DNA from: Octopus bimaculoides
Lineage: Eukaryota
NCBI RefSeq assembly: GCF_001194135.2
Contig: NC_069002.1
Span: 9,280,414 to 9,332,244, forward strand
Direction of reading: 5' to 3'
Length of the DNA stretch: 51,831 nucleotides
Part shown: piece after piece, positions 542 to 26,146 of the stretch
Position numbering within the stretch: the first letter of the stretch is position 1
How the letters are laid out: each line of letters begins with the position of its first letter
Notes under the pieces: model-generated
Seen by the model: the letters and a program-made list of their open reading frames with translations, nothing else
Databases searched by the model: none
Told to the model about the DNA's origin: nothing
Program-made: the position numbers and the translations under genes

Positions 542-544
<3 letters not shown>
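263..544. repeat. Foldback: ~78-bp inverted arms around a 19-bp tandem repeat (ATAAATAGGTCTTACAGCT x ~7.7)
   Basis: 263-340 is the near-perfect reverse complement of 468-544; period 19 read directly. Confidence 0.9.
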
Positions 545-586
<42 letters not shown>

Positions 587-4602: not shown

Positions 4603-4652
<50 letters not shown>

Positions 4653-6066: not shown

Positions 6067-6459
6067 GGCGCAGGAGTGGCTGTGTAGTAAATAGCTTGCT
6101 TACTAACCACATGGTTCCGGGTTCGGTCCCACTGCATGGCATCTTGGGCAAGTGTCTTCTACTGTAGCCTCAGGCCGACCAAAGCCTTGTGAGTGAATTT
6201 GGTAGACGGAAACTGAAAGAAGCCCGTCGTATATATGTATATATATGTATATGTGTGTTTGTGTGTCTATGTTTGTCCCCCTAGCATTGCTTGACAACCG
6301 ATGCTGGTGTGTTTATGTCCCTGTCACTTAGCGGTTCGGCAAAAAGAGACCGATAGAATAAGTACTAGGCTTACAGAGAATGTCTTGGGGTCGATTTGCT
6401 CGACTAAAGGCGGTGCTCCAGCATGGCCGCAGTCAAATGACTGAAACAAGTAAAAGAGT
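6067..6459 (+). mobile_element. Full-length tRNA-derived SINE family B with internal (TA/TG)n
   Basis: A-box-like TGGCTGTGTAGTAA and B-box-like GGTTCGGTCCC. Many partial copies (3115-3268, 15059-15170, 17730-17905, 29180-29420, 35460-35625, 39975-40190, 44835-44990). Confidence 0.8.
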
Positions 6460-6656
6460 AATTGGAGCCAGGTGCAGCCCTCTGGCTTGCCAGCTCATGT
6501 CAAACCATCCAACCCATGCCAGCATGGAAAATAGACATTAAATGATGATGATGATGATGATGATAGCAAAGTTCCTCTGTTGTAATCGTCTGAAGTTCAA
6601 AGAACATAATCAAGACAGTATAAATAGTTAACTGTAATTAATCAGATAAAAATTCT

Positions 6657-6659
<3 letters not shown>

Positions 6660-6735
<76 letters not shown>
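6660..6735. repeat. (ATT)n microsatellite, ~25 units
   Basis: Read directly. Other microsatellites: (TA)n 545-580, (CA)n 3811-3960, (CCAT)n ~12299-12330, (GAT)n-rich 36025-36235. Confidence 0.95.
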
Positions 6736-6736
<1 letters not shown>

Positions 6737-7513
6737 GTTCAGTAGTTTTATTTTTATAACGTGCTTTCACTTCACTACCGAGCGCAGCTCTGTGCGCCTT
6801 GGGTATGTGCTGTGGTTTGCTGTGGTGCTCTTATGTTTACTGTATTGAAAGTGTTTTGCGTAGAATGTGTGCAGTACCCAGTAGTGCAATTTTCTGTATG
6901 TATTATTATTATTATTATTATTATTATCTATTCAGTGGAAAATACAGATTGATGGTTTCACTATTTCTTCTAACCACTTGACATCCTTATTAGTTTATAT
7001 TATATTGTGTATGGTTGAAGATCAAAACAAGTTGTTATTGTACTTGGGGGTCATAAACTGTGTGGACTCAAGTGCCGACCTTGCTGACAAGCTCTTCTAT
7101 TTGCTAGAAACAGCAGTCAAATCTTCCACAACTCACATCGCTATTTTAAACAATTCTTTATAATTTTGGCACAAGGCCAGCAGTTTTGAGGGGAGGGGGT
7201 AAGTTGATTACATCACCCACCCCCCTCCAGTACTTGACTGGTACTTTATTGCATCACCCCCAGTACTTNNNNNNNNNNNNNNNNNNNNNNNNNNNNNNNN
7301 NNNNNNNNNNNNNNNNNNNNNNNNNNNNNNNNNNNNNNNNNNNNNNNNNNNNNNNNNNNNNNNNNNNNNNNNNNNNNNNNNNNNNNNNNNNNNNNNNNNN
7401 NNNNNNNNNNNNNNNNNNNNNNNNNNNNNNNNNNNNNNNNNNNNNNNNNNNNNNNNNNNNNNNNNNNNNNNNNNNNNNNNNNNNNNNNNNNNNNNNNNNN
7501 NNNNNNNNNNNNN

Positions 7514-8643
7514 GCTCGCTTGAAGATTACGACGATGAGGAATACTCCTTACTCACTAGCACTTTTGACAAGCCAGAGGAGAAAAATCGGAGGTCGTCCA
7601 CTCTTGGGTCGAGTTCGATTTTGTCACCATCTAAAGTCACTTCGCCATCGACGTCGTCATTTTCATCATCCTCATCATTATCATCGACACCACCACCACC
7701 TCCTCCACCTCTCCCTAAAGCTGTGATTTCACCTTCAAGAACATTCACTGGAGATACACGGGATGATAAAAAGACACTTTTGGCTAACATCCGTGGAAAA
7801 TTGCACAAGAAATGGGAAGAGCTTTCTGGCGAATCTGGCTCTAGCCCTGAAAATGAGAATGAAAAGTGTCCAAGCCCTCTTCGGAAGCAAAATTCTGACG
7901 AGAGCTGCGAGTCACAAAGTCCAAAAATCAATTCCAAATCTGCAGTCGTTGACTCTATCAATATGTCACAGGAAATTGAGCAAGGTGAGGAACTCACCGA
8001 AGACATTGTGCCAGACAGTTGGGATACAGATGATGATTCTGGTCTCTCAGAAAACTTGTTGGTATGCAAAACCTCTGACGGGACCAGCACAATCCAGCTG
8101 TCTCCACCGGCACGTTCGTCACGAATGTCTATTCGCGAAAGATTCCGTGGGAGTAAAATGATCAAAAACATAGTGGACCCGGTTCCCATAAAAATGTCAA
8201 ACCTCCAATCAAAATCAAACCCTGAGGAATTTGTCGATAACGATGGCAGAATTTATTATGATGTTGAGGATGAGGAAAAAAACCAGAATCCGATGGTAAA
8301 AGATAACGATACAGTGACGGAAGACTCTGCTGTGAAGAATACTGCCAAAAGTGTTTGTAGAGATAGAACTATACCAACCCAGAAACTTCTAATCATATCT
8401 GTATCCCTATTTATCTATCTAATTACTCCCATGCCACCTTACCTTGCCGGTGTTATCACTGGCGCTGCAGTTACCTCAATAATATGGGTTGCCTATTTTT
8501 GCTTCAAGAATGCTTACAACTCTGCAAAACGAGAGGATCTTTCTACTAAGCACAATAATGCTTCCCTCTCTATTAGTCAGTTACCACCCCTCCTGGTACC
8601 AGAAATGAAAGAACCCAAGTTGGAAGATACCATTATTTACAAA
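7514..8643 (+). CDS. TEX2: TEX2 large Ser/acidic-rich exon with hydrophobic hairpin (starts inside N-gap 7269-7513)
   Basis: Open frame SLEDYDDEE...EDTIIYK, ending AAA|gtaagt at 8644. Hydrophobic stretch LLIISVSLFIYLITPMPPYLAGVITGAAVTSIIWVAYFCF. Confidence 0.9.
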
Positions 8644-11600
8644 GTAAGTTGTGTCTTTTGTTTTTGTTTTCTTATTTTTTGTTTTATGAAATGTGTTCTT
8701 TTTCTTCTCACCAAATAATTTGGGTAAAGGAATTATACATGAAAAAGGTCATAATATCGGGTTGTCTGGAAAGTTCGTGCCGATTTATAGTAGCTTACCT
8801 TTCGACTTATTTGCCATGAAACCACCTCAATTCTGGGAAGAGGGTATTTTCAAGTTAAAGGAAAGATGGAGACGCATTGTGCAACAAAATGGTTCATATC
8901 TGGTTGATTAAAAATGTAATGGCAAGTATTTATTGACCTTTTTCTTTCCTTTAAAAATTGGCACAAACTTTCCGGACAACCCAATATTTACAGTCCACTG
9001 AGGAGTCAGTTTATGTGATTGGAATCAATGTTTCCCGTGAGCATCTGTCCTCAACCTTTCTTATGGCACAGATTTCTTCCATGCAAGACAATTTTTCCAT
9101 AGACCAAGGGATCGCACACATAAAAACACACAATAAAGTGCATGATATGGAATTTAATTATTATATCTATATCACACACGCACACACATCAAAACAGTTT
9201 GAGTCAAATTCATTTGTAGTCTTGAGTTTCGAGCACAATGCCAGTCGTCAGCCATTTAACCCTTTAGCATTCAGATTATTCTAGCAAATTTAATACTTCT
9301 TCATCCATATTGTTTTAAGCTAATCATGCATTATTTCGTAGCTTCAAGGTTTCAATGATGTTATCACCTATTTTTAGAATGACATTATAGGTTGGTGTGA
9401 GATGCCAAATCTGGGCAGTTTTAACATAAAACAGGTAGATCATTTGGGCTGGATATGGCCGGTTTAAACACTAAAGGGTTAAAATGGCTGATGACTAGTG
9501 TTGTGCTTGAAACTGAAGCGTACCAACGAAATTAAATCAAACTGTATATATATATATATATATTGGTGTTGTGTGAAGAAGCACCCGGTACACTCAGTTA
9601 AGTTGTTGGCTTTAGGAAAGGCATACAGCTGTAAAAAAAACTCATGTCAAAGTAGACATACAACCTGGTAGAACTCTCTGACCCATGTGCTTTTGTCAAA
9701 CTGTCCACCCCTGCCAGCATGGAAAAATGGATGTTAAATGGTGATACTGATGATGACATACTATTAATGTAACTGGTGCCATGACCTGAAACAATAACTA
9801 TATAACTATAAGTTGTGTGTGCCCTGACTAGGGACCTAGTACCTTGCTGGTTATGGGATAGAAACCATTCTTTTTTTCAGCCTGCTGCAAGCAGGCATTC
9901 TACCTAACAGCTGTTTTTTAATTGTTTGAATGAGATTTTTATTTCTTGCTCCCATCATATGGGACTCCATTGGTTATGACAATGAGCGTTCCAGTTGATC
10001 TGAACAATGGAATAGCTGGCTCATGAAGTGTGTGTGTGTGTAAATGTGTAAGTGGCTGAGTACGCCACAAGCATGTGTACTCTTAATGTTTGTAGCTCTC
10101 AGGGAGATTCAGTGTGAAACAAAGTGCGACATGCCTGGCCCTTTGAATTACAGGTGTGACATGCCTGGCCCTTTGACTTACAGGTACACCTCATTTTTGC
10201 CAGCTGAGTGAACTGGAGCAATGTGAAATAAAAGTGTCTTGCTCAAGGCCATAAACAAACAACCTTGCCCTGACTTGTGCCTTGGAGGGAAACTTTCTCG
10301 GTACACTCTCACGGTCATTGATGACCAAAAGAGGTCTTCACCCCTTATCCCTTTTAAATAAGCATTACATTTGAAAGAATAATCTAGATGCCAAAGGATT
10401 AAATTGATTGATATTTCTTGTTGCCATTCTATGATTTTATTCTGATGTAATTTTGTTTATGTTTTCAAGGGATGGATGAATGAACTGTACTACTATGATC
10501 CGGACAACTATCACATAAATAAAACCAATTCTGTGTATGTTCGCCTTGAAGGAGTTACCTTGCGCCTTTCCACTCCCAAAACTAATGTACCAAAGCGTGC
10601 TATGTTTGATGAAAATCTTTCTAATCCAACCTTCATCAACCAGCGCCATTATGATTTGAACAGCTGTCGTGTGTTTCTTCTTCCTGCAGGACTTGTTAAG
10701 AAACGCCTCTGGAGTAAAAAATACCCAATATGTATTGATTTGACTAGAAACAGTGCTTGCAAATCTGCCCCTTCCTTGCAAAAGAAGCCATTAAAAGACA
10801 ATGCTTCCTCCCCCAGCACTGACATGGGCTTCGAAGTCATTTCTACAGAATTGCTCAATCCTACAATTCTTTATTTATTTGCTCGTACTGGGAGAGAGAA
10901 AGAAGAATGGTACAACAGGTTTCATGCCGCATCTCTGGGCTTGCCTTTGGGGAACCACATCCAAGACATTCATAATGCTTTAAAAGTACCTCCCCATCAT
11001 AAACGCAGTGACTCTGACACTAATATCGGTATAGCTGATGGCTTTCAGAGGCACAGGCGCCACAATTCTATGGATTCAATGAATTCTTCTGCTGCAACTA
11101 CTCCAGTTGATTCAACTGCCAGTTTATCTCCAATGTCTGAGAACTTTCAACACACAAACATGAAGAAGTTCTCCCACTACATGGCCAAGTTAATGCCAGC
11201 TAGTCTTGATGGAGTTAAATCTAACTCAGGCCCACTCCATTCGCAGAGGGAATCTTCTTCAGTGTCAGCTTCGAGCACACCAAGCAGTCCAACCTCTCGA
11301 GAAGTCCCTTCTCCTGATCTTCCTTATACCATATTAGACTTTAGTGAACCACAACTTCTTTGGATAAATGCTTTAATCGGACGTTGTTTATGGGATTTCT
11401 TACAAGATAAATCCTGGACTGACAAAGTTATGGAAAAGTTACAGAAAAAACTCAGCAAAATTCATGTGAGTATGATAGTTTTTTTTTTTTTTTATTGTTA
11501 AGACTTCATTATATTCTTTGATCAGTTCAATCCAACAAAGCAAAAGGGTCCGTGGATCATCCCTCAGAACAACCTCAAATAGTGTACATCAGTGCTAGCT

Positions 11601-14600
11601 CTTGTTCTTGCTAAACTCTTCAGTCTCTCTCTTTCTCTCTCTCGACCACAAAATTATTCCAAACTTTGGAAACACACTACACTAAGTCCAAACAAAAGAA
11701 AGGCTACCTCTTTGATTCTGCCAGCTATTAATCTACTAACAGGCATTGCTCAGAATTAAAAGGTGTTGTGTCGATGCCCCCAGGCGAAGAAGTAGGATCT
11801 CCCACTCCAGCGATCACCAGTAGGGTTTCTCATCTACTGGATCTTTGCCCTATTCTGTCTGTCATGAGTAGAGCTTTACCATCACTTTTAATTAACAGCA
11901 CCACCCTTTCATCCTTCCTTCTCATCTTCATCTCTTCTACATTTGCCTCATTTCTATTGTTTAACCATGTTTCTTTTTTTGGTGGTGGTGGGGTTGTTAA
12001 TGCTTCAGTAAAAATATTTCATCTTGGATTTCTGTTTAATTTCCAGGTACCTTATTTCATTGAAGAACTAAAAATTACAGATATCGATTTAGGTACTTCG
12101 ATTCCGATTCTTCAGAAGTCCTCTAAACCCTATCTGGACGAACGTGGTTTCTGGGTTGACCTGCAGACGATGTATACTGGTGGTTTCAAGATGACTATTT
12201 CTACTAAGGTTAATTTAATGAAACTTAAGAAAAAGTCACTTGAAAAATCTCCAGTTCTTACAAGCAGACGGTTCGTATAATAAAATTTTAATTTTTTTCC
12301 ATCCATCCATCCATCCATCCATCCATCCATCTCCTCTGTTTCTTATTCCTGGGAAGGTGGTCATTGGGGTAGAGTCCTCAAGTACCCCATCCATAGGGTC
12401 CTACCAGAAGCGACCGTCCTTACTCTTTCCTGCTAGACTCTCAAGCGTGGCCAACTGTGACTATGAATATTCTCTCACCATCTCGTTATTGGTCTCCCAC
12501 TGGTTGGCTCAGCTTGAAGAATCTGTTTTGCGATTCTCTCATGCAACATTCTAATCATTTTTATTTATTAATTTATTTTTATTCTAGTTCTGCAGTGACG
12601 GATTCTAATGAAGAAGATAGTGCTGAGTCTTCGACAGATGAAGAGCCTGAGGATAATGGTATAGACGAGAGGTAAGATTTTGTTTGTGTAGATATGTCAT
12701 AAATATATATGATGTATGTTTGAAGTGATGTGTGTCCTCTCTTTGTAGAGGAAAAACCTTGCTATATTGTATATGTCTCTGCATGCATGCTCCAGTCACA
12801 AATACACGTGATACACATCATTTAACCCTTTAACATTTAAACCGGTCATATCCGGCCAAAAGTATTCTGCTTGTTTTATGTTCAAACTGGCCAAATCTGG
12901 TCTCTCACACCAACCCTACAATATCATTTTGAAAATTAACAGCTACCTCATCAAAATCTCATAGCTACAAGATAATGCATGATAAGTTCAAAACAATGTG
13001 GATGAAAAAGCATTAATTTTGGCAGAATAATGCAAACACTAAAGGGTTAATATACTCAAGATTTAAGGTGGTGAGCTGGCAGAATCATTACCATGCTGGA
13101 CGAGATGCTCAGTGGCATTTCATCTGTCTATATGTTCTGAATTCAAATGCCACCAGGGTCAATAAAATAAGTACCACTTGACCACTGGTGTCAGTGTAAT
13201 CTCCTTACGCCTACCTCTGAAATTGCTGGCCTTGTGCCAAAATTTGAAACCAATATACACAGGATTTAAATGCAAGCTGCTGTAAGTTTCATGCTTCTGA
13301 TAATGCAACAGTTTGACAAATTTGTATGCTGTGTATTTTTGGGCAGTCATTCAGGCTGAAAATAAGATATCAGATGTGTGTGTGTGTGTGTGTGTGTAAA
13401 ATAAATACAAATGATGTATTAAATATCATACAACATCCATTCTACTCTGTAAAGTGGTTGTCATTAGGAAGGGCATCCCGCTATAAGAACCATGTCAAAA
13501 CTGACCTCGCCTGTACTGGTGCCACAGTCCTGGTGTTGATTCCTTCAAGGAGGTGCTCCAGTATGGTCGCAGTCAAATGACTGAAACGAGTAAAAGAAAC
13601 AACAGAATGTATAACGCAGGCCACCATTGAAGCGAGATAAATTTACCAAAGTTTTTCTTTGCAGCAGCGGAGTTCCACAGATTGGCAGCAGTGGCAGTGG
13701 AGCTAGCCGCAAGATCCTGCGATACATTGACATGATAACACAGTCCAAGTATTTCCAGCAAGCCACTGAGTACAAGTATATAAAGAAGGCAATGGAAGGT
13801 GTATCCAACACGCCACTGATTCTTACTGTTGAGGTACATTGTCTCAATGGGGTACTCACCATTAATGTGCCACCCCCACCTACAGATAGATTGTGGTAAG
13901 TATTTTTCGTTGTTTATCTCTCAATATTTTTATATGTCTTTCATTCGTTTGTTTGTTTTTACTATGAGTGGCTGAGTGGTTAAGAGGTTTGCTTCCCAGT
14001 CATATGGTTTCAGGTTCTGTCCCTGCTGCATGACACCTTGCTGGGGCATGTTTATTTGTTTGTTTTTACTATGAGTGGCTCTGTGGTTAAGAGGTTTGCT
14101 TCCCAGTCATATGGTTTCAGGTTCTGTCCCTGCTGCATGACACCTTGCTGGGGCATGTTNNNNNNNNNNNNNNNNNNNNNNNNNNNNNNNNNNNNNNNNN
14201 NNNNNNNNNNNNNNNNNNNNNNNNNNNNNNNNNNNNNNNNNNNNNNNNNNNNNNNNNNNNNNNNNNNNNNNNNNNNNNNNNNNNNNNNNNNNNNNNNNNN
14301 NNNNNNNNNNNNNNNNNNNNNNNNNNNNNNNNNNNNNNNNNNNNNNNNNNNNNNNNNNNNNNNNNNNNNNNNNNNNNNNNNNNNNNNNNNNNNNNNNNNN
14401 NNNNNNNNNNNNNNNNNNNNNNNNNNNNNNNNNNNNNNNNNNNNNNNNNNNNNNNNNNNNNNNNNNNNNNNNNNNNNNNNNNNNNNNNNNNNNNNNNNNN
14501 NNNNNNNNNNNNNNNNNNNNNNNNNNNNNNNNNNNNNNNNNNNNNNNNNNNNNNNNNNNNNNNNNNNNNNNNNNNNNNNNNNNNNNNNNNNNNNNNNNNN

Positions 14601-16523
14601 NNNNNNNNNNNNNNNNNNNNNNNNNNNNNNNNNNNNNNNNNNNNNNNNNNNNNNNNNNNNNNNNNNNNNNNNNNNNNNNNNNNNNNNNNNNNNNNNNNNN
14701 NNNNNNNNNNNNNNNNNNNNNNNNNNNNNNNNNNNNNNNNNNNNNNNNNNNNNNNNNNNNNNNNNNNNNNNNNNNNNNNNNNNNNNNNNNNNNNNNNNNN
14801 NNNNNNNNNNNNNNNNNNNNNNNNNNNNNNNNNNNNNNNNNNNNNNNNNNNNNNNNNNNNNNNNNNNNNNNNNNNNNNNNNNNNNNNNNNNNNNNNNNNN
14901 NNNNNNNNNNNNNNNNNNNNNNNNNNNNNNNNNNNNNNNNNNNNNNNNNNNNNNNNNNNNNNNNNNNNNNNNNNNNNNNNNNNNNNNNNNNNNNNNNNNN
15001 NNNNNNNNNNNNNNNNNNNNNNNNNNNNNNNNNNNNNNNNNNNNNNNNNNNNNNNNNNGATTCCGGGTTCAGTCCCACTGTGTGGCACCTTGGGCAAGTA
15101 TCTACTACTATAGCCTTGTGAGTGAATTTGAAAGACAAATTGAAAAAAGCTTGTCATATATACATATATGTGTGTGTGTGTGTCTTTGTTGTGTCTGTTT
15201 GTCCACCCCCCACCCCCATCACCACTTGACAATTGGTGATGAGCAATGTGAAATGAAGTATTTTGCTCAAGAACACAGCATGCCACCACCCTGGGAATTG
15301 AACCTATGATCTAGCAATTGTGAGTGCAACACTCTAACCATAGGCTACATGCCTTCGCACATATGTATGTATGCAGATATATATATGTGTGTGTCATATG
15401 TACGTGTGATGATTATAAATGAGTATCCCCATCATACAAGGGACATTGTCCATTTCCAGTCTTCCATAAAGAGCATGTCTGGCCATGGTGGAAATATTAC
15501 CTTGTTTGGAAACAGGTGAAGGTTGGTGACAGCAAGGGCATCTAACTGCAGAAAATCTGCCTCAACAAACTCTATCTTTTGTAGGTTCTGTTGGAGGCAT
15601 GCTGGCCCCTGAAAAATAATTCCCTTCTTTTCTTCTCACTAGTCTTGCTACCCTTCTTTCTGAGATTTAAAAAAAAATAGAAAAAAAGAAACCGCACCAA
15701 ACAAACAACTGTGCAATGTGTATTGTTTTTTTAATCTAGGTATGGTTTTCGTGATAATCCACAACTGACTCTTGTGGCTAAACCTAAGGTTGGAGAAAGA
15801 GAAGTGACTGTTACCCATATCACTGAATGGATTGAGAAGAAATTAACCATTGAATTCCAGGTAAAAGAAAGCATTTTTTGAAAATCTTTTCTCGAGTTTT
15901 CTATCATTTCTTTGATTATAATATTCCATCCTTTAATCTGTTAAGCATTTAAACTAACCACATCTAGCCCAAATATTCTGGCTGTTTTACATTCAAACCA
16001 GTCAGATCCTAGTCTCTCACACTAACCCTGCAATGTCATTCTAAAATAAACAGTTACATCATTGAAATCTGAAAGCTATGAGATAATGCAAGATTAATTC
16101 AAAATAATCATCCTGAAAGATTGCGTTTCCCCTCCAGAAACAGTTCCACAACCATAGGATGAATTTGATCAGATAAAATGCTTAGTCTTGACTATTAATT
16201 CTGCCATGAAGGGAAACCATTGGGCTGGCAGATTTCCTAGATAGCCCCCCCCCNNNNNNNNNNNNNNNNNNNNNNNNNNNNNNNNNNNNNNNNNNNNNNN
16301 NNNNNNNNNNNNNNNNNNNNNNNNNNNNNNNNNNNNNNNNNNNNNNNNNNNNNNNNNNNNNNNNNNNNNNNNNNNNNNNNNNNNNNNNNNNNNNNNNNNN
16401 NNNNNNNNNNNNNNNNNNCCCCCGATCATCACTGGTCCTCTTCCATGTTTAAACTAGCTTTTGATGGTTTTATAGATATTTCAAAATTATGATGCGAGGT
16501 GTTTCCTTTATTTTGTCCAACCC

Positions 16524-16566
<43 letters not shown>

Positions 16567-19335
16567 CATATATACACCACCTAATTTGGTGGTGTTCCTA
16601 ATTTTATTATATACTATTAAAACCAATTAAAAAATAACTGTATATGTAATGGATAAGATTATTTAGGTACAACAACAATTTTCTGGAACTTTTGATTCCA
16701 AAACCTTTCTTGAAAGTCAGTGTTGTACCTGTATATACATTTATGTTCTATATTTCAGCTGGTAACTTACAAAAAACAAAAGACGGATTCTTTTTTTATT
16801 CTTCATTCATTTGGTTATTTTTCTCTGTATATTCCTTAGCGAATATTTGTGCTGCCCAATATGGATGACTTGGTAATCCCTCTGTTGCTGCCAGGACTTC
16901 CTGAGGATGCTGTTCCTTCAACCATCTGTCCACCTGACGGCACTGAGGTCTGATGCAATTGATGCCAATTAAAACATTTCATTGCTCTTAATCGATCGTC
17001 AATTGTTTATCTGACTCTCTCTGCTTGTCAGGCCAGTTTTCTTGCTGGTCAGCATTATTTTATATACAACTGCACATGTATATTTCTATACATCTATATA
17101 TATATTTGTCAGAATCTTGCAGTGTAATGCACATATATTAAGTAGCTATTCTTTCATAACACAGCTTGTTTTGTGTTGTTTTGCATTTTTGTTGATTTCA
17201 CGGATCAGTAGTCTTGTGTTTAAAGCATGACATGTTTTTGCAGTTTTATTTGATGGTCAGCATTATTTTATATACAACTGCACATGTATATTTCTATACA
17301 TCTATATATATATATTTGTTAGAATCTTGCAGTGTAATGCACAAAAATTTAGTAGCTATTCTTTCGTAACACAGCTTACTTTGTGTTATTTTGTATTGTT
17401 GTTGATTTCACAGATTAGTAGTTTTGTGTTTAAAGCATGTCTTATTTTTGCAGTTTTATTTGATGTCGTTTCCTTGTTTTTCCACAACACTTTACATGAC
17501 AGCAGCTCCTCAAATTTTCTCTGTCTCTTTTAAAAACTTTGCTCTTTGCCAATGAGAATTGTAAGATGTCTGTTTACGTCATAAGCGTTATTTATCTAGA
17601 AACTACAAGGAATATGAAATAAATTGTTTTAACGGTGGAACTTGAAGTAGATAAAGCTATAAATGATAGCATGTCGAATCTTGAGTTCAAAAACTACTTG
17701 GATAGAAAAAGTCAAAGGCTGCAAGCTTTGTGTGCCTCTGTTTGTCCCCCCCACCATTGCTTGACAACCAATGTTGGTGTGTTTACATCCCTAGCGGTTC
17801 AGCAAGAGAGACCGATAGGATAAGTACTAGGCTTACAAAGAATAAGTCTTGGGGTCTATTTGCTCCAGCATGGCTACAGTCAAATGACTGAAACAAGTAA
17901 AAGAATAGCCTTTAAAATTTTTTTTTTTTCCTTTTTTGATGTTGGTGAATCATTGATTAAATCAGTATGACTATACTAATCTAACATGTATCAAGATAAG
18001 CTGCATTATTATCTAGCAGTTCATGATAGATATTTCTCAACAACAGTACATCACTCCTCCCTGCCACGCACACGATTGAGTCACTATTACTGTCGCTTAT
18101 ATCTATAAGACACTCCCTGACAAACACCTGATGTACAAATTAAAAAGTTCATCATCCATTATCTCTCGTACTTTGACCTCCCAACACCTGATTGAACTGC
18201 ATTTGAGCTGAGACTGTTGCTGTTTGAAAGAGAGGTTGGGTTAGGGTTTGCACACTGATCTTGTAAAACCCTCACCAGCAGCAACTATCCTAAGCAGACC
18301 CTTGGGTTGTAGAGTTGTCACCCGAGTGATGCAAAGACGTCATCCATCAGGAGTGGCCCAGTGGTTAGTGTTGCACTCACCATGTAGGTCATGGGTTCAG
18401 TTCCTGGACTGGGCAGCATGTTGTGTCCTTGAGCAAGACGTGTCATATGTTACTTCAGTGGTGCTGTGTGGGGATGCTGGCGATTTGGTATGGCTGACTG
18501 AACATTGAACCTGTTTTGACAACCGTACTTTTTGGCACTGGAAGCAAAACGCACACACAAACATACATGCAGAAATACACACAGAAATATACGTGTAGAA
18601 ATACATTCAAACACACATATAAAAAGTGAAAGAAGTATTACAGTTTATTGATTGAACACGATTGACATAAACACTACTCTCCCTCTCCTCAGATACATAA
18701 ACAGAGAGTGGTGGGGAGAGTGAGAGAAGCATTAAAACATCTGATGTTAAATCAGTGATGCTAGAGAGGTGGCACCAGATTGGCCGTGTGAAACCATCTC
18801 ATGCCAAGTCAATTAAGTGTCTGGCTGGGAGGGAATCGATTAACGAAAGTTCTATTACACACCAGTCATCCTATTTAGTTCATAACCAGTGTCGTTATTC
18901 ATTCCTAATATTTCTATGAAAAGATATCTGGCTGTGAGGAAATATTACTTTGCTTGGAAACAAGTGAAAGTTGGTGACAGGAAGGGCATCCAAATGTAGA
19001 AAACCTACCTCAATAAACTCTGTCAGCCCTAGCATGGATGGAAAAGAGGTCATTAAATGACGATGATAATAAAAGATTCCTAAATCATTATTATTTATGC
19101 ATGATACATATTGTCTGCATCAAAATCAATATCATTTATGCATGATACTCAGTGTCTACTTTAAAATCAACATTATCATTGTTACTGTTTTATCCAAAAC
19201 ATATAAACATGAGTCTGGACTGACCTCATAATGTCTATTGTTGCATACAACTGGTACTTTATACCTATTGTTCGTTATTTTTAATCTGTATGTATTGTTG
19301 TTCATTTATTAAATTTTGCATGTTCTCTTTTCATT

Positions 19336-19376
<41 letters not shown>

Positions 19377-21267
19377 NNNNNNNNNNTTATATATATATAT
19401 ATACATATAAAATTTATTAATAAGGGTAGAAATTGATATTAATCAATTAAAACCAGTGGTCTAGCATTTTAAAAAAATCCGAAGATTAAAATTATATTAC
19501 ATACAAAAATAAGAGGAATGACCAGCAAAAGTGGACTCCTATATGCTAGAAATAGATGCTGAATCACCTAACCACGAAAAGATATGTTCTCAGTAAAATA
19601 CTAAATAAAAAAATCGTTTTTTTTATTTAGTATTTTTTCATTTGTCTTGCCCTTTTACAGTTTGTGTCGCTAAATTTTTACTGAGAACATATTTTTCGTG
19701 GTTAGATGATTCGGCATCTATTTCTAGCATATAGGAGTCCACTTTTGCTGGTCATTCCTCTTATTTTTGTATGTATATATATATATATGTATATGATCAG
19801 TGTCACATACATAATATATATGTGTTGTTAAATGCTTTTAAGTGGTAGTATTTTGTCCAGAGAAAATCCTTTTAAAGATGTAGTGCTAAAAGGCATTCGT
19901 TTGTTATATGTTTGCTGCTATTTCACATTTAGGGCTAGTCATAGCATCCTTGTGTAGCAGCCATCTCACCTGTTTGATAATTTCTTTGTCAGTATCCATG
20001 TTTCACTGCCATATAATTGCACTTTGGAGTTCCAGATGGCAAAGATGGCTAGGCTGTTGCACTCACGATTGCAAGATCGTGGTTTCGATTCCCAGACCAG
20101 GCATTGTATTGTGTTCTTGAGCAAAGCACTTCATTTCACATTGCTCTGTGATCATTTTGTCATCTGACATGTGGCACACGGTGCACCTGTACAGGTAATA
20201 GTAAATTTGATGGTGGGAGTGAGCTTATGCGAACACAAACATTTGATCACTATAACCAAACCATCTGTGTGGTTGTTCGGCAAGAAATTGCCGAATCCTC
20301 ATATGTTGTCTGATGATGAGAGTCTATGATATATATATTAGACAAAATGAGATAACAAAGCCAAGGCCGTGAGGAGTTTTCAGGACATTTATAAGATAAA
20401 AGATATCGATATAGTCTTACAGCTGTTTCTGGGATATTATGGATATCCCTTCATCAGAGAGACGATGTGAGATGATTAAATAGCGGTAATTGAATTTGAA
20501 ATAAGGAATTATTATGGAAAAGGAAGAGATAGGGAATATAGAGGGAAATAAGAGAATGAAAGTAGAAATAAAATATATAACCCTTTAGCATTTAAACTGG
20601 CCATATCCAGTTCAAAACAATGTGGATAAAAAGGCATTAATTATGGCAGAATAATGTGAACACTAAAGGGTTAAAGATATTGTAGTTGCAGTTCCATTAT
20701 TTGAGAAAAGTGGTGTATAGAAGTGGTAAAAAAGTTTCCTGTACATGGTATACCTCAGCTTTACCTCATTTTGTCTATATATATATATATGCATGCTAAT
20801 ACAAGACCTACATTAGACTCTTCACTCGTATCACTATTGAACCAAGAGTTTAACTAGTCTGTCCATAGCACTTACTTAGCGTTACCTGCCTCTCTTTGGG
20901 TCTTCTAGATACCAATACCTCTCATATATATATATATATGTATGTATGTATGTATGTAAATCTGCTTGATTATTGTGTTTCCAGAGCATGAAACTGTTAG
21001 CAGCTCATATTTGAATACTGTTTATATTGAATGATATTTATCTCTCAGTAGACGGAATACTTCTTTTGCTGAACCTACAATAACAGTAAACAATGTGTGT
21101 GTGTGTGTGTGTATGTATATATATAAAGACATGTATAATGATTCAGTTTTTTTCTCTTTCATTTCCAGAGGTTACTTGTTTTACCAAATATGGACGATCT
21201 TTTGATTCCAATCATGATAAATCCTGTGGAGGAATTTTTGTCACTGATTACGACAACAGTGCACTAA
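7514..21267 (+). CDS. TEX2: Testis-expressed protein 2 (TEX2/Nvj2-like; 2 TM + PH-like + SMP domain), 5'-partial. Exons 7514-8643, 10470-11465, 12047-12270, 12588-12671, 13665-13895, 15740-15860, then 16840-16953 OR 21169-21267
   Basis: All introns are GT-AG with matching phases (0,0,2,2,2,0). Joined peptide contains K|GWMNE..YDP..Y, VYVRLEG..LRLS, KKRLWSKKYPICI, LYLFARTGREKEEWY, W.NALIGR..WDFL, PPPPTDRLWYGF, KPKVGEREV, F|RIFVLPNMDD, all recalled hallmarks of metazoan TEX2. At least 965 aa are visible. Confidence 0.95.
8755..8986 (+). mobile_element. Internally deleted mariner (Tc1/mariner) element
   Basis: TA-flanked ~30-bp TIRs (TCGGGTTGTCTGGAAAGTTCGTGCCGATTT / AAATTGGCACAAACTTTCCGGACAACCCAA). 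Retains the transposase C-terminus FAMKPPQFWEEGIFKLKERWRRIVQQNGSYLVD*. Confidence 0.88.
9256..9482 (-). mobile_element. TTAA-flanked MITE (piggyBac-type ends), family F
   Basis: TTAA-CCCTTTAG ... CTAAAGGG-TTAA. Other copies at 5545-5735, 5878-6050, 12822-13050, 15940-16110, 20578-20674, 51277-51500. Confidence 0.8.
10470..11465 (+). CDS. TEX2: TEX2 exon, PH-like domain and start of SMP domain
   Basis: ttttcaag|GGA TGG ATG ... ATT CAT|gtgagt; 996 nt, phase 0/0. Confidence 0.95.
12047..12270 (+). CDS. TEX2: TEX2 SMP exon (VPYFIEELKITDIDLG...LTSR)
   Basis: ttccag|GTA CCT TAT ... AGA CG|gttcgt; phase 0/2. Confidence 0.9.
12588..12671 (+). CDS. TEX2: TEX2 exon (R)SAVTDSNEEDSAESSTDEEPEDNGIDE
   Basis: attctag|T TCT GCA ... 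GAG AG|gtaaga; 84 nt, phase 2/2; contains the DSAESSTDEE motif. Confidence 0.88.
12822..13050 (+). mobile_element. TTAA-flanked MITE family F, full copy
   Basis: TTAA CCCTTTAAC ... CACTAAAGGG TTAA; opposite orientation to 9256-9482. Confidence 0.8.
13665..13895 (+). CDS. TEX2: TEX2 exon (...KILRYIDMITQSKYFQQATEYKYIKKAMEGVSNTPLILTVEV...PPPPTDRL)
   Basis: ttctttgcag|CAGCGG ... TTG TG|gtaagt; phase 2/2; tandem CAGCAG acceptor. Confidence 0.92.
15740..15860 (+). CDS. TEX2: TEX2 exon (W)YGFRDNPQLTLVAKPKVGEREVTVTHITEWIEKKLTIEFQ
   Basis: ttaatctag|G TAT GGT ... TTC CAG|gtaaaa; phase 2/0. Not in the ORF track. Confidence 0.95.
16840..16953 (+). CDS. TEX2: TEX2 terminal exon A: RIFVLPNMDDLVIPLLLPGLPEDAVPSTICPPDGTEV*
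   Basis: attccttag|CGA ATA TTT, phase 0, TGA at 16951-16953; conserved F/VxLPNMDD motif. Confidence 0.92.
   Translation, partial: RIFVLPNMDDLVIPLLLPGLPEDAVPSTICPPDGTEV
17046..17464 (+). repeat. Direct tandem duplication of ~208 bp in the TEX2-A 3' region
   Basis: TGGTCAGCATTATTTTATATACAACTGCAC starts at 17046 and again at 17254; the copies differ by scattered substitutions. Confidence 0.9.
17618..17623 (+). terminator. Candidate poly(A) signal AATAAA for TEX2 isoform A
   Basis: AATAAA about 665 nt downstream of the exon A stop. An ATTAAA also lies at 16968-16973. The sequence is AT-rich, so chance occurrence is possible. Confidence 0.3.
19498..19775. repeat. Inverted repeat, ~100-bp arms with ~77-bp spacer
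   Basis: 19498-19598 is the near-perfect reverse complement of 19676-19775. Confidence 0.9.
20414..20463 (-). ncRNA. Degenerate minimal type-I hammerhead-ribozyme-like motif, probably from a Penelope-like retroelement terminus
   Basis: Minus strand reads GTCTCT-CTGATGA-A-GGGATAT-ccata-ATATCCC-A-GAAAC-AGCT-GTA-AGAC: both catalytic boxes, a 7-bp stem II, a palindromic stem III loop and a GUA triplet. Confidence 0.45.
21169..21267 (+). CDS. TEX2: TEX2 paralogous alternative terminal exon B: RLLVLPNMDDLLIPIMINPVEEFLSLITTTVH*
   Basis: Strong acceptor tttttttctctttcatttccag|AGG TTA CTT, phase 0, TAA at 21265-21267. 11 of the first 15 aa are identical to exon A. Confidence 0.8.
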   Translation, partial: RLLVLPNMDDLLIPIMINPVEEFLSLITTTVH

Positions 21268-24200
21268 CAGACACAAACAAAAAAACNNNNNNNNNNNNNN
21301 NNNNNNNNNNNNNNNNNNNNNNNNNNNNNNNNNNNNNNNNNNNNNNNNNNNNNNNNNNNNNNNNNNNNNNNNNNNNNNNNNNNNNNNNNNNNNNNNNNNN
21401 NNNNNNNNNNNNNNNNNNNNNNNNNNNNNNNNNNNNNNNNNNNNNNNNNNNNNNNNNNNNNNNNNNNNNTTCTTTCTTTTAAACTTTTACCATGGAAACA
21501 TGTTATTGTATACAAAAAAAAAAAAGAAAAGAAAAAGAGAAAACAAAAACAAAACCAACAAATAAATTGTCTTATGTAATAGCAACAACAGAAGAAAGGT
21601 ACATTAGGAAACTAAGTAGAAAATAACAGTTTTGTTTATTTGTTTATTTCCAAAATATTCCCCAAAATTGTCCAACTGCTTTTAATAAGACTTCAAGGAT
21701 GAATTTGAAAATGATAATAACAAAAAAAAAAAAAAAAATCAAGAAGACTTAAGAACATTCCAAAAACCATAAAAAAAAAAAAAATTAATGTTAGTAATTT
21801 TGTTTGGGTTTGTATAGATGGCATCATCCATACACGTTTCTGTGTGTGAAGAAAAGATTGTGAAAATGCAAAGCTCTTTTGTTATATAAATGACCTTAAG
21901 ATTGCAGAAGAAGAACCAATGGTGTAATTATTATTATTTATGTTATTGTTGTTGCTTTGTTTTATGCGAGCTGCTCCGAGTCTCACCCAGAGACTTCAAG
22001 TAACAACAAATGGATGTTTTTTACTATGGGTGTTAGCAGTGACGTATTGTAAGGAAGGAAGAGGAGAAACTGGGAACTAAGATTCTGTTAAGAGTTCTTA
22101 AGAGAATAAGATATTTTCAGGTTGGCTATGTTTTGCTTAGGACTCCTTATTACCATTGTTATTACCATGGTGGAGAGCTGGCAGAACCGTTAGCATGCCG
22201 GGCAAAAATGCTTAGCACCATTTCTTCTGTCTTTATGTTCTGAGCTCAAATTCCACTGAGGTCGACTTTACCTTTCATCCTTTCGAGGTCGATAAAATAA
22301 NNNNNNNNNNNNNNNNNNNNNNNNNNNNNNNNNNNNNNNNNNNNNNNNNNNNNNNNNNNNNNNNNNNNNNNNNNNNNNNNNNNNNNNNNNNNNNNNNNNN
22401 NNNNNNNNNNNNNNNNNNNNNNNNNNNNNNNNNNNNNNNNNNNNNNNNNNNNNNNNNNNNNNNNNNNNNNNNNNNNNNNNNNNNNNNNNNNNNNNNNNNN
22501 NNNNNNNNNNNNNNNNNNNNNNNNNNNNNNNNNNNNNNNNNNNNNNNNNNNNNNNNNNNNNNNNNNNNNNNNNNNNNNNNNNNNNNNNNNNNNNNNNNNN
22601 NNNNNNNNNNNNNNNNNNNNNNNNNNNNNNNNNNNNNNNNNNNNNNNNNNNNNNNNNNNNNNNNNNNNNNNNNNNNNNNNNNNNNNNNNNNNNNNNNNNN
22701 NNNNNNNNNNNNNNNNNNNNNNNNNNNNNNNNNNNNNNNNNNNNNNNNNNNNNNTCGACTTTGCCTTTCATCCTTTTGGGGGTCGATAAAATAAGTACCA
22801 GTTAAATACTGGGGTCGTTGTAATCAACTTAACCCCTCCCACCCCAGAAACTGATGGCCTTGAGCCAAAATTTCAAATTATTATTAAGGCAGAAAATTGA
22901 CAAAATTTTGCCCATTTTTACCTTCAGATTAGAAATTCCACTGGGGTCTACTTTGCCTTTCAACCTTTCGGAGTCGATAAACTAAGTACCACTTGAGCAC
23001 TGTGGTTGATGCAGTTGACTTCCCCTCCCCTCAAATTGGCTGGCCTTGTGCCAAATTAAGAAAGGATTATTATTATTATTATATTTAGGCATGTACTTTT
23101 TCTTTATTGCTACTTCAAATCATGCTTGGGTTAACCTTGTCTTTCATCATGCTGTTTGGAGAATGTGTGTGTGTGGGGGGGGGGAAGGATTAGAAAAGTA
23201 CTAGTAATATAAAATACCATACAACTTGTTTTATTAAAATTATCTCCACCTCTAGAGGATGTGTCACTTTTACCAAATGGTAATGAAAACCAAATCCGCT
23301 TAAATAGGGAGATAATCTCACAAATCAAGAATTCTCCAAAGTTGACATGTTATTAAATATTGTCTGGAGATAAGAGGGCAGTTGTGGATGCATGTTTCTG
23401 GCTCAATAGCCATCATCAGCACACTTTTCTTACCTTGTCTCCAGTAGCCAAGTAGCTTAGACATTTTACAAAAAAATCACTTAGATAATTTGCATAAGTT
23501 AAATAAAAAAAAAAAGATCCAAGAGAAATAACTCAGGCTAGTGACATGTATTTGAAGAACATAGACTAATACAGGTATATCAAACACTATATAACATTAA
23601 TTTTTGATGTATTAAAATTATCTCCACTTTTACAGGATGTGTCATATTTACCAATTGGCAATTAAAGACCAGCTCCTTGAGGAGGGAAGTAATTTCAAGG
23701 ATCAAGAAATAACTCAAAAAGGCTAGTAGTATATGTATTTGAACAATATTGACAAATACAGGTGTATCAAACATTATACAATGTACAAGTAATAATATAG
23801 GATTGACTGTGTACATTCTTTTTCATATAACTTGCTTTGTACCAAGCTGAAAGAACGTGTGATTATATAAGTCAGTTAATGATTGATATCGACATTTTGT
23901 GTCAAATGCCGTTTTTATTTTTGTCAGATGTTTTCTTTCATAATTGTTTTGAAACCAAAAAAATCTTTTTAAACGAAAACAAACATTGGTAAATTCATAA
24001 TCAAAGAATTTAAAACAAAAGTAACAATTTTTTTTCTGAATATGGAAATGGGTATAATGCATTTTTTCCTAAATTATATATATACAAGTGTATATGTATA
24101 CATATATAATATATTTGCAAACAATAATTTGTAAGTTCTATATAAACCGCATATTTATATATATTATGATGACAAAGATAATATTTGCTCAGTAATCAAA

Positions 24201-25957
24201 TAAGTGTTGCTAATGTTATAATTTGTAAGATTAGCAATGGCCAATCAATGAGGCAATGGTAGAATTTGATTCCTATGGAGTTGGAATGATCAAAATAAAT
24301 AAAAAAGAACCCTTCCACTTGTCCTGCTGTTTCAGTTTTTGTGGAAGATTTATTGTTTAACATTATTTTGTGAAAAGAGATTTTTACTAGGAATTCTTTT
24401 TCCAACAAGAAGTTATTGCTTATAATGTAATAAACCCTTTCTGTTTACCATCTGTGTGCATGGTGACTAAGATTAGCAATCCCTTATATTTCTCATCATC
24501 TAGCAGCCACCTAGATACCAAGTCATGTGTGGCTCTTAATTAAAAAACTAGTCATTAATTAGTATAGTAATTTAATCTGTTATAAGCCTACAATGAGGCT
24601 TATATATGCAGAAATAGCTTTACATGCTAAAAATAATAGCCAAATTTCCCCTTAAAAAATTAACTAATCAAAAAATCAATAGCAGGGAAGATACATTGCA
24701 TAATTTAGCTGTTGATAAATGAAATGGGATGGTCATGGCTGGAATGCCTTTGATCTATTGGTCTGGGCTGACCTGGGGGGGAGGGTGTCTAAAATTTAAA
24801 AAAAAAAAAAAAAAAAAAATTAAAAATGTGAAATTATCTTTGTTTGTAATCTTTGTATTGGTACATATGAAGATTGTGTGTCTTGCATTGAGACTTTTTT
24901 TTTAGCAGAGGCAAACTGTTTTGTAATTTTCAGTTATTAAAGAAAAATCTAAAGATAAGTAAACTACAACCCTGACTCTGTTAAATATTAACATTTTTTT
25001 TTTTTTTACTTTGGTTTTGGGTAAAAAGAAAATACAGGAGAATCAGTTATGATTTTGACATATTCCCCTTTCAGATTCACATACTTATTGCAGCAGTTTT
25101 TCTAAGCCCTGTAAAAGAACTCAAAAGGTTAGACCTCCAACCAGAACTTTTGCAATATCCTTAAAGCCAGCAACTTTACAGCACCCCTCATGTATGTGGG
25201 TGTTTGTATGTGAATTTGGGTGTCATTGTCTTGAAACTGCATGATAGTTTTAAATAAGTACCTCTGTCATACATGTAGTCTTCCTTGTTTTTAGTTATCC
25301 ATGGAAAACGCTTGGTCATGGGGAAATATTACCACCATGCTTGGAAACAGATGAGGGTTGGTGACGGAAAGGACATCCAGCTACAGAAAATCTACCTCAA
25401 CACATTCCATCAGACACATCTGAGCTTGGAAATGTGGACGTTGCTCAATATAATCCTGCCATTGATAGAACCCCGTACATGACTGGTACTTTATTTTATA
25501 AAGTACCAGTCATGTACAGGGTTCTGATGTAATTGACTTGTCCCCTCCCCTCAAGATACTGATCTTGACACCCTGCAACAGATGACGTCCTGTTCAGAGG
25601 GAATGTTATGATCTCAATCATTTGTATGCCATGGAAACCAAGTAACCAGCCTTGTAAGTTCTAAGACTTAAAGAATTAAATGAAGAAAAACAATATATTT
25701 TGGTAACAGAATAATCCTTCCTACTAAAGGCACAAGGCCTAAAATTTTGGGGGATAGGGCCAGTTGATTAGATTGACCTTAGTATGCAAATGGTACTTAA
25801 TTTATCAAGGCTGAAAGGCAAAGTCGACCTTGGCGGAATTTGAACTCAGAACGTAGCGATGGGTGAAATGCTGCTAAGCATTTTGTCTAGCATGCTAACG
25901 ATTCTGCCAGCTCACCAACCTTGATAACAGAATAATAAAAACCAATGAATTTCAAAG

Positions 25958-26040: not shown

Positions 26041-26146
26041 TCAACACCCACCCCATGTTAACCGGGCGACATGATCGGTTTTCTGGCGTGTAGGCTTGAT
26101 GAATCCTAGGAACTGTAATTCTGAAATTGCTTGAATAAAACGAGCT
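26041..26146 (-). CDS. ORC3: ORC3 exon 20 (Q)[34 protein letters not shown]
   Basis: ttcactag|A GCT CGT; TGA at 26043-26041. Confidence 0.96.

What the first reader, a model, noticed from the sequence alone, without database searches (positions are those of the whole stretch)
15860..21267. TEX2 has two ancient, paralogous, mutually exclusive last exons
Seen: after the phase-0 donor at 15860 there are two good phase-0 acceptors 4.3 kb apart. They encode RIFVLPNMDDLVIPL-LLPGLPEDAVPSTICPPDGTEV* and RLLVLPNMDDLLIPI-MINPVEEFLSLITTTVH*. Eleven of the first 15 residues are identical, yet 9 of those 11 codons differ synonymously (CGA/AGG, GTG/GTT, CTG/TTA, CCC/CCA, GAT/GAC, GAC/GAT, TTG/CTT, ATC/ATT, CCT/CCA). 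That is the signature of an old exon duplication with both copies under protein-level selection. Known: this motif closes the SMP lipid-transfer domain of TEX2/Nvj2 proteins at ER contact sites. Inference: alternative polyadenylation or last-exon choice swaps the end of the SMP fold, the C-terminal tail and the whole 3' UTR, possibly retargeting the protein between contact sites or tissues. I do not know of this being described for TEX2.
Basis: partly seen in the sequence, partly recalled or inferred. Interest (0 to 1): 0.8.

Follow-up and report, generated by a model that had tools for sequence, protein, structure and literature searches.

The report
Octopus TEX2: two duplicated alternative last exons
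The octopus lipid-transfer gene TEX2 has two old, duplicated versions of its final coding exon that give the protein different tails; this is a real but ordinary kind of gene architecture, and both versions already sit unnoticed in separate public gene models.

Summary
The window is Octopus bimaculoides TEX2. After the phase-0 donor at 15860 there are two phase-0 acceptors, at 16840 (exon A) and 21169 (exon B). Both encode R-x-x-V-L-P-N-M-D-D-L-x-I-P, a different tail and a stop. The match is 11/15 residues; 20 shuffled windows never exceeded 8/15. Synonymous sites are saturated and the flanks are unrelated, so the duplication is old.

Both exons are already used as the terminal exon in public models. 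RefSeq XP_014777264.1 ends with B. UniProt A0A0L8GX32 and both O. sinensis isoforms end with A. No annotation seen here holds both, and no paper found describes it.

Mytilus californianus and two unnamed lophotrochozoan genomes (one mollusc-like, one annelid-like) also carry a second intact last exon 4-7 kb downstream. Lottia, Capitella, a scallop and a cobra show one. Whether the B exons share one origin is unresolved.

What changes is mainly the tail. A is disordered and ends in a mollusc-conserved [S/T]-x-V, which looks like a PDZ ligand. B is hydrophobic and weakly helical.

I saw no RNA reads. The O. sinensis contig ends before the exon B position.

Verdict: a new member of a known class (tandem-duplicated C-terminal exon substitution). 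Interest is moderate.

The parts
7963..21267 (+). CDS span of the RefSeq TEX2 model XP_014777264.1 (811 aa). It ends at the exon B stop, so exon A lies inside its last intron.
   Evidence: L010 is the same sequence as the window (offset 2038). The gene range 10001-23305 maps to window 7963-21267.
15740..15860 (+). Shared penultimate coding exon. It encodes the end of the SMP beta-sheet and most of the last SMP helix, and ends in phase 0.
   Evidence: It is 100% identical in protein to P0008, P0157 and O. sinensis. There is only one copy in the window.
15861..15866 (+). 5' splice site GTAAAA (CAG|GTAAAA), used by both last exons.
16254..16418 (.). Assembly gap inside the intron between the penultimate exon and exon A.
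   Evidence: Its flanks are collinear with O. sinensis L006 at 18024-18176 and 18847-18945. No TEX2-like coding sequence lies in that interval.
16817..16839 (+). Polypyrimidine tract and AG acceptor of exon A.
   Evidence: 80% pyrimidine at -23..-4, ending tag.
16840..16953 (+). Proximal last exon A: RIFVLPNMDDLVIPLLLPGLPEDAVPSTICPPDGTEV plus TGA. The tail is proline-rich and acidic and is predicted disordered. It ends T-E-V-COOH.
   Evidence: It is used by P0008, P0154 and P0155. Against O. sinensis it has 3 synonymous and 0 replacement changes in 114 nt, while the flanks are about 88-90% identical. The tail has pLDDT below 50.
16954..17640 (+). Start of the presumed 3' UTR of exon A, with poly(A)-signal-like hexamers at 16968 (ATTAAA) and 17618 (AATAAA). 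The true 3' end is unknown.
   Evidence: hexamer list. It is collinear with O. sinensis at about 89%. A direct repeat lies at 17034-17095 and 17222-17303.
19377..19386 (.). 10-N gap inside a (TA)n microsatellite between exons A and B.
   Evidence: O. sinensis collinearity stops at the microsatellite, so continuity is not independently confirmed.
21146..21168 (+). Polypyrimidine tract and AG acceptor of exon B.
   Evidence: 90% pyrimidine, ending cag.
21169..21267 (+). Distal last exon B: RLLVLPNMDDLLIPIMINPVEEFLSLITTTVH plus TAA. The tail is hydrophobic and is predicted as a low-confidence helix.
   Evidence: It is the terminal exon of RefSeq XP_014777264.1. It keeps the family-invariant V, P, N and D and the near-invariant M, D and P. 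Tail helix 288-300 has pLDDT about 54-60.
21268..21566 (+). Start of the 3' UTR of exon B. It is interrupted by gap 21287-21469, and the first AATAAA is at 21561.

Best explanation
Octopus bimaculoides TEX2 is an ER-anchored SMP-domain lipid-transfer protein. Its gene carries two tandemly duplicated alternative last exons.

How it works:
- The single donor at 15860 is spliced either to the proximal exon A (16840), with cleavage and polyadenylation before exon B, or past A to the distal exon B (21169).
- Each exon carries its own stop, so one mRNA encodes one tail.
- Both exons re-encode the invariant [R/K]-x-x-V-x-P-N-M-D-D-x-x-[I/V]-P segment that follows the last SMP helix, so the lipid-transfer module stays intact.
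- What is exchanged is the C-terminal tail and the whole 3' UTR.
- Tail A is a disordered, proline-rich, acidic peptide. Its end, [S/T]-x-V-COOH, is conserved across molluscs and fits the class I PDZ-ligand consensus.
- Tail B lacks that end and is hydrophobic.

Shown: the paralogy, phase, stops and splice signals; the old age of the duplication; purifying selection on A; use of each exon in a public gene model; and the same layout in other lophotrochozoans.

Inferred: mutually exclusive use in RNA, poly(A) site choice, and any difference in partner binding or localisation.
For: - Sequence and statistics.
- There is only one penultimate exon and there are exactly two last-exon copies in 52 kb.
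- Public models: P0157 (RefSeq XP_014777264.1) ends with B and its CDS range ends at 21267. P0008 (UniProt A0A0L8GX32) and O. sinensis X1/X2 end with A.
- Exon A is under purifying selection: dN = 0 and dS = 0.11 against O. sinensis, with flanks about 88-90% identical.
- Exon B keeps every invariant or near-invariant family position (V273, P275, N276, M277, D278, D279, P283 in alignment A1) even though synonymous sites are saturated.
- The same architecture occurs in gap-free assemblies. Mytilus californianus L012 has A at 28007 and a second exon at 32019, KTFVFPNMDDQVLPTF...SQT*, behind ttgttttgttttatag. L002 has exons at 10930 and 17642. L004 has exons at 11035 and 15441. All are phase 0 with strong acceptors and saturated dS.
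- The fold is SMP: Pfam MMM1 at 35.5 bits against a cut-off of 21.9, and Foldseek hits to Mmm1, Mdm12, E-Syt2 and TMEM24.
- AlphaFold places the helix 254-272/273 across the exon junction. Tail A is disordered and tail B is weakly helical.
- A-type tails end TEV (octopus), SEV (Sinanodonta), TAV (Lottia), SPV (L001-L003, Mytilus) and SSV (M. edulis). B-type tails end TVH, SQT, APW and NDV.
Against: - No RNA-seq junction or 3'-end data could be examined. Gene models are predictions.
- Two protein searches for spliced fragments (penultimate exon joined to B) in transcript assemblies found none, for octopus or Mytilus.
- RefSeq lists only the B form for O. bimaculoides and only the A form for O. 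sinensis, so co-expression in one species is not shown.
- Exon B could not be checked in a second octopod, because the O. sinensis contig ends before the orthologous position.
- The physical link between A and B crosses a 10-N gap in a microsatellite that is not independently confirmed.
- B tails are not alike between species, and the 16-residue identity matrix does not group them.
- The PDZ-ligand reading rests on a three-residue pattern only. Two gastropods (Candidula, Nucella) lack it.
Confidence: 0.75

Rival explanations
1. Only one of the two exons is really used. The other is an unused relic, most likely B, that a gene predictor picked up.
For: No transcript evidence was seen directly, and no spliced fragments were found. 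The B tail has no clear counterpart in other species. Each annotation shows only one form.
Against: B has an intact frame, a 90% pyrimidine acceptor in the correct phase, and all family-invariant residues, although its synonymous sites are saturated. A neutral relic of that age would have decayed. RefSeq chose B although A is closer in position and is more like the terminal exons annotated in other molluscs, which suggests transcript support (inference). A is conserved with dN = 0 against O. sinensis and has orthologous tails across molluscs. Intact second exons exist in three other genomes.
Confidence: 0.12
2. Scaffolding artefact. The piece 19387-21286 that carries exon B belongs elsewhere, for example to a fragment of a second TEX2-like locus, and was joined here across the 10-N gap.
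For: The gap lies in a (TA)n repeat, and O. sinensis collinearity ends there. The chromosome-scale record is the same sequence as the window, so it is not an independent check.
Against: No other TEX2-like exon lies near B. The RefSeq model joins the shared exons to B. Gap-free long-read assemblies of Mytilus, L002 and L004 show the same layout at the same 4-7 kb spacing. The divergence between A and B excludes a haplotype duplicate.
Confidence: 0.04
3. The two-exon layout arose several times independently in cephalopods, bivalves and annelids, and not once in an early lophotrochozoan. On this view octopus exon B is a cephalopod-lineage duplicate.
For: Octopus B is as close to octopus A, Lottia and Capitella (11/16) as to anything else, and less close to other B exons (7-10/16). 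L002 B is closest to L002 A (12/16). Octopus A and B share R1 and L5 against M5 in most A exons. Lottia, Capitella and the cobra show one exon, and the scallop shows one within its last intron and 10 kb downstream.
Against: Mytilus B is nearer to L004 B (11/16) and to the scallop exon (10/16) than to Mytilus A (7/16). These share T or V at position 2, an aromatic at position 5, and P-T-[F/M]. All four within-genome pairs are saturated at synonymous sites. Sixteen residues cannot resolve the question.
Confidence: 0.4

Closest known systems
Tandem-duplicated exon substitution events that swap homologous C-termini (Martinez-Gomez et al. 2022, PMC9741552), for example the duplicated 3' exons of tropomyosin TPM1, Tm1 and lev-11
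   Same: Homologous neighbouring exons in one gene, used one at a time, give isoforms that are identical except for a homologous region. C-terminal events are common (77 of 236 human events) and mostly ancient, and the tails are solvent-exposed or disordered.
   Different: TEX2 is not among the described genes. Here the event is seen in lophotrochozoans and not in the one vertebrate checked. Use in RNA is not yet shown.
Vertebrate TEX2, yeast Nvj2 and C. elegans TEX-2 (ER-anchored PH + SMP lipid-transfer proteins at ER-endolysosome and other contacts; PMC9930140, PMC8523718)
   Same: The protein is an orthologue. It clusters with proteins named 'testis-expressed protein 2', has an SMP fold, and carries the same invariant VxPNMDD C-terminal motif.
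   Different: The papers read describe no alternative C-terminus. Naja naja has a single last exon, with another gene 2.4 kb downstream.
Alternative last exons coupled to alternative polyadenylation (general mechanism; my own knowledge)
   Same: There is a proximal terminal exon with its own stop and poly(A)-like signals, and a distal terminal exon that is reached by skipping it.
   Different: In most alternative last exons the two exons are unrelated in sequence. Here they are paralogues that preserve the same structural motif.

Membership tests
TEX2/Nvj2 family of SMP-domain lipid-transfer proteins | SMP (TULIP) lipid-binding domain | tested here: met
   Pfam MMM1 scores 35.5 bits against a cut-off of 21.9. 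The AlphaFold model matches Mmm1, Mdm12, E-Syt2 and TMEM24 SMP structures with Foldseek probability 1.00.
TEX2/Nvj2 family of SMP-domain lipid-transfer proteins | Orthology to proteins named TEX2 | tested here: met
   It falls in the same 90% cluster as XP_014777264.1 and XP_029654114.1, both named 'testis-expressed protein 2'. 394 homologues carry the same C-terminal motif.
TEX2/Nvj2 family of SMP-domain lipid-transfer proteins | PH-like domain upstream of the SMP domain | tested here: inconclusive
   Pfam PH_SMPa scores 21.5-22.1 bits, below its cut-off of 27.
TEX2/Nvj2 family of SMP-domain lipid-transfer proteins | N-terminal hydrophobic ER anchor | tested here: inconclusive
   A hydrophobic stretch, LLIISVSLFIYLITPMPPYLAGVITGAAVTSIIWVAYFCF, lies in ORF 7186-8718. 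No transmembrane predictor was run.
Tandem-duplicated alternative (mutually exclusive) terminal exons | Significant sequence homology between neighbouring exons on one strand of one gene | tested here: met
   11/15 identities at E = 1e-5. It is the only such match in the window, and shuffles peak at 8 or fewer.
Tandem-duplicated alternative (mutually exclusive) terminal exons | Same splice phase and competent acceptors behind one shared donor | tested here: met
   Both acceptors are phase 0, with AG preceded by 80% and 90% pyrimidine tracts. The donor is CAG|GTAAAA.
Tandem-duplicated alternative (mutually exclusive) terminal exons | Each exon has its own stop codon and polyadenylation site | tested here: inconclusive
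   The stops are confirmed: TGA at 16951 and TAA at 21265. Only consensus hexamers were found downstream, at 16968, 17618 and 21561. There are no 3'-end data.
Tandem-duplicated alternative (mutually exclusive) terminal exons | One and only one of the exons is present in each mature mRNA | not testable with these tools
   Support is indirect only. Separate public models use A (P0008, P0154, P0155) or B (P0157). No spliced transcript fragments were retrieved.
Tandem-duplicated alternative (mutually exclusive) terminal exons | Purifying selection on both copies | tested here: met
   For A, dN = 0 and dS = 0.11 against O. sinensis. For A against B, dN = 0.20 with saturated dS, and all invariant family residues are kept. 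An orthologue test for B was not possible.
Class I PDZ-binding C-terminus (X-[S/T]-X-hydrophobic-COOH; my own knowledge of the consensus) | C-terminal [S/T]-x-[V/L/I] | tested here: met
   Octopus A ends TEV, Sinanodonta SEV, Lottia TAV, L001-L003 and Mytilus SPV, and M. edulis SSV. It is absent from all B tails and from Candidula and Nucella.
Class I PDZ-binding C-terminus (X-[S/T]-X-hydrophobic-COOH; my own knowledge of the consensus) | Actual binding to a PDZ domain | not testable with these tools
   This needs a binding assay.

The most novel reading that the evidence does not exclude
The choice of last exon is an ancient lophotrochozoan switch shared by molluscs and annelids. It turns a conserved PDZ-ligand C-terminus (...G-T-E-V) of TEX2 on or off. 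That would move this ER lipid-transfer protein between PDZ-scaffolded sites, such as neuronal or epithelial ER-plasma-membrane junctions, and its default ER-endolysosome contacts. Some lineages later kept only one form.
Probability: 0.12. Interest if true: 0.6.

Novelty: new member of a known kind. Interest (0 to 1): 0.35.

Why it matters
TEX2 is one of the less understood SMP lipid-transfer proteins at ER contact sites. Published work treats it as having a single C-terminus. A conserved pair of alternative C-termini would give a natural handle on what the C-terminal tail does, and one of them carries a mollusc-wide PDZ-ligand-like end. The finding also explains why public octopus annotations disagree about the end of this protein. 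It adds an invertebrate example to the class of ancient duplicated terminal-exon substitutions. It does not reveal a new mechanism.

Tried and rejected
- Tandem gene duplicate: rejected. There is only one penultimate exon and no other TEX2-like exon near B.
- Retrocopy origin of B, suggested by an in-frame 'FQ' upstream of B that mimics the end of the previous exon: rejected. The match is only the 6-nt acceptor TTCCAG, and nothing further upstream is similar.
- Haplotype or assembly duplicate: rejected by the saturated synonymous divergence.
- Search for spliced transcript-derived proteins joining the penultimate exon to B in octopus, or to the second exon in Mytilus. It returned only single-exon read-through ORFs from genomic contigs. 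This was uninformative.
- Search with 301 aa of the B isoform for other cephalopod TEX2 proteins. No cephalopod C-termini were returned. The results held only proteins of about 520 aa or fewer.
- Test of exon B in O. sinensis. The contig VCDQ01004412.1 is collinear only to window position ~19414 and ends about 0.8 kb later, so absence there means nothing.
- L001, L003 and Sinanodonta show one exon within the 10 kb that could be fetched. They have retroelement insertions or large introns, so they are inconclusive.
- Grouping the B exons of different species by a 16-residue identity matrix: inconclusive.
- Resemblance of the octopus B tail (EEFLSLITTTVH) to acariform mite TEX2 tails (IEQYVTTVP, SVSVVH): noted, but too short to call homology.

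Full report
**What is in the sequence.** The window is Octopus bimaculoides chromosome record CM046622.1 (GCA_001194135.2). A locus fetched for the RefSeq TEX2 protein is letter-for-letter the same sequence, offset by 2038 bases.
- The penultimate coding exon is 15740-15860. It ends in phase 0 with CAG|GTAAAA.
- Exon A starts at 16840, behind an 80% pyrimidine tract and TAG. It encodes RIFVLPNMDDLVIPLLLPGLPEDAVPSTICPPDGTEV and then TGA.
- Exon B starts at 21169, behind a 90% pyrimidine tract and CAG. It encodes RLLVLPNMDDLLIPIMINPVEEFLSLITTTVH and then TAA.
- Eleven of the first 15 residues agree, and nine of those eleven codons differ.

**Is it more than chance?** Yes.
- tblastn of A against the window finds B at E = 1e-5 and nothing else.
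- A six-frame scan finds no other 15-residue match with 8 or more identities. Twenty shuffled windows peak at 6-8.
- Nei-Gojobori gives dN = 0.20 with synonymous sites saturated.
- The 150 nt upstream of the two acceptors are no more alike than shuffled sequence.
- There is only one copy of the penultimate exon. So this is an old duplication of one exon. It is not a gene duplicate, a haplotype copy or a retrocopy.

**The assembly gaps.**
- Gap 16254-16418 is in the intron before exon A. Both flanks are collinear with a gap-free O. sinensis contig. The interval there is about 670 bp and has no TEX2-like coding sequence.
- Gap 19377-19386 sits inside a (TA)n microsatellite between A and B. O. 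sinensis matches up to the microsatellite and not beyond it, and its contig ends about 0.8 kb later. The join that links exon B to the gene is therefore not independently confirmed by DNA.
- A third gap begins 20 nt after B's stop.
- None of the gaps touches coding sequence. The frame depends on splice phase only.

**Are both exons used?** I could not see reads, but the public gene models are telling.
- The 90% protein cluster of this gene has seven members.
- RefSeq XP_014777264.1 (O. bimaculoides, 811 aa) ends ...EFQRLLVLPNMDDLLIPIMINPVEEFLSLITTTVH, which is exon B. Its CDS range ends at window 21267.
- UniProt A0A0L8GX32 (O. bimaculoides, 981 aa) and both O. sinensis RefSeq isoforms (XP_029654114/5) end with exon A.
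- None of the models in that cluster pairs an A form with a B form in one annotation.
- The O. sinensis record that carries the gene stops short of the exon B position. This may be why only A forms are modelled there (inference).
- Two searches for spliced protein fragments in transcript assemblies found nothing for octopus or Mytilus.

**Selection.**
- Exon A has 3 synonymous and 0 replacement differences from O. sinensis in 114 nt (dS = 0.11). Its flanks are about 88-90% identical.
- Exon B could not be compared with an orthologue.
- Exon B keeps every invariant or near-invariant position of a 40-sequence family alignment (V, P, N, M, D, D, P), although its synonymous sites against A are saturated. 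A neutral relic of that age would not keep them.

**Other animals.** I fetched the loci around TEX2 in other genomes.

| Genome | Last exons found | Detail |
|---|---|---|
| Mytilus californianus (gap-free) | two | Annotated exon at 28007; second intact exon at 32019, KTFVFPNMDDQVLPTFVQYLPKGSHGNEYTEVDQKHSQT*, behind ttgttttgttttatag |
| L002 (unnamed host contig; closest to bivalve and other mollusc TEX2) | two | CVFVLPNMDDVVVPILTAPW* lies 6.7 kb after the canonical exon |
| L004 (unnamed host contig; closest to Capitella, so probably an annelid) | two | KVFVWPNMDDLVIPTMDSGLPMNDV* lies 4.4 kb after the canonical exon |
| Lottia, Capitella, Naja naja | one | One exon within the 10 kb downstream that could be fetched; the Capitella locus holds about 4 kb of Ns |
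| Scallop (Ylistrum balloti) | one | One exon in the last intron and 10 kb downstream |
| L001, L003, Sinanodonta | inconclusive | Only 10 kb downstream could be fetched |

All four within-genome pairs are saturated at synonymous sites. Whether the B exons are orthologous is unresolved.
- Mytilus B is closer to L004 B (11/16) and to the scallop exon (10/16) than to Mytilus A (7/16).
- Octopus B is equally close to octopus A, Lottia and Capitella (11/16).

**What the exon encodes.**
- The region is an SMP domain. Pfam MMM1 scores above its threshold. The AlphaFold model matches Mmm1, Mdm12, E-Syt2 and TMEM24.
- In both isoform models the last long helix (residues 254-272/273, pLDDT 84-90) begins in the penultimate exon and ends 3-4 residues into the last exon.
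- The conserved PNMDD segment follows as a short strand at lower confidence.
- Tail A is disordered (pLDDT below 50). Tail B is a low-confidence helix.
- So the structural motif is preserved in both forms, and what is exchanged is the tail and the 3' UTR.
- The A-type tails of octopus, bivalves and Lottia all end [S/T]-x-V (TEV, SEV, TAV, SPV, SSV). This fits the class I PDZ-ligand consensus (my own knowledge). No B tail does. This is a lead and not a result.

**Comparison with what is known.**
- Duplicated terminal exons that swap homologous C-termini are a described class. They make up 77 of 236 human tandem-duplicated exon substitutions, most of them ancient. The tropomyosin 3' exons are the classic example. 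TEX2 is not mentioned there.
- The TEX2 papers read describe no alternative C-terminus.
- Searches combining TEX2 with isoform, splicing or octopus found nothing relevant.

**Verdict.** This is a new member of a known kind. It is already implicit in public annotation and lacks direct RNA evidence here. Interest is moderate.

Noticed in passing
window 26041-31267 and beyond, minus strand: An ORC3 gene (Pfam ORC3_N, ORC3_ins, WHD_ORC) converges on TEX2. Its CDS ends about 4.8 kb after the exon B stop, which limits the length of exon B's 3' UTR.
   Followed up: partly
window 7269-7513 (gap) and 7963: The RefSeq O. bimaculoides model starts at 7963 (811 aa). The O. sinensis protein has about 190 more N-terminal residues, and some of these are encoded in the window just after the gap (SLEDYDDEEYSLL...). 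The octopus RefSeq model is probably N-terminally truncated by the gap.
   Followed up: partly
window 17034-17095 and 17222-17303: There is a direct repeat of about 60-80 nt (ggtcagcattattttatatacaactgcacatgtatatttctatac) in the presumed 3' UTR of exon A. It is also present in O. sinensis.
   Followed up: no
window 22147-22300, 22755-23080, 25710-25920: These segments match many places on both strands of the O. sinensis TEX2 contig at 70-87% identity. This points to an interspersed repeat family in introns and downstream of TEX2.
   Followed up: no
L007 (Lottia) 1-5273 and L011 (scallop) 1-8302, minus strand: An IRE1-like gene (beta-propeller, protein kinase, Ribonuc_2-5A) lies head-to-head upstream of TEX2 in both Lottia and the scallop. 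This is conserved microsynteny. It was not checked in the octopus window.
   Followed up: no
L001 12833-14533 and L003 13067-13447, minus strand: Reverse-transcriptase ORFs (RVT_1) are inserted downstream of, or within the last intron of, TEX2 in two unnamed mollusc-like genomes. They push any second last exon out of the fetched range.
   Followed up: no
P0044, P0085, P0052, P0212, P0227 (acariform mites and unnamed relatives): These TEX2 tails, such as ...NIEQYVTTVP, ...SVSVVH and ...YVTTTK, resemble the octopus exon B tail ...EEFLSLITTTVH. The match is too short to decide between homology and convergence.
   Followed up: partly
protein cluster of P0008: A 37-aa JGI/IMG protein named 'molecular chaperone DnaK' (P0156) sits in the octopus TEX2 90% cluster. 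It is most likely a clustering or naming artefact.
   Followed up: no
L002 17690-17705: The stop of the second last exon of L002 lies inside CCATG|GTAACT, which could also serve as a 5' splice site. That exon might therefore not always be terminal.
   Followed up: no
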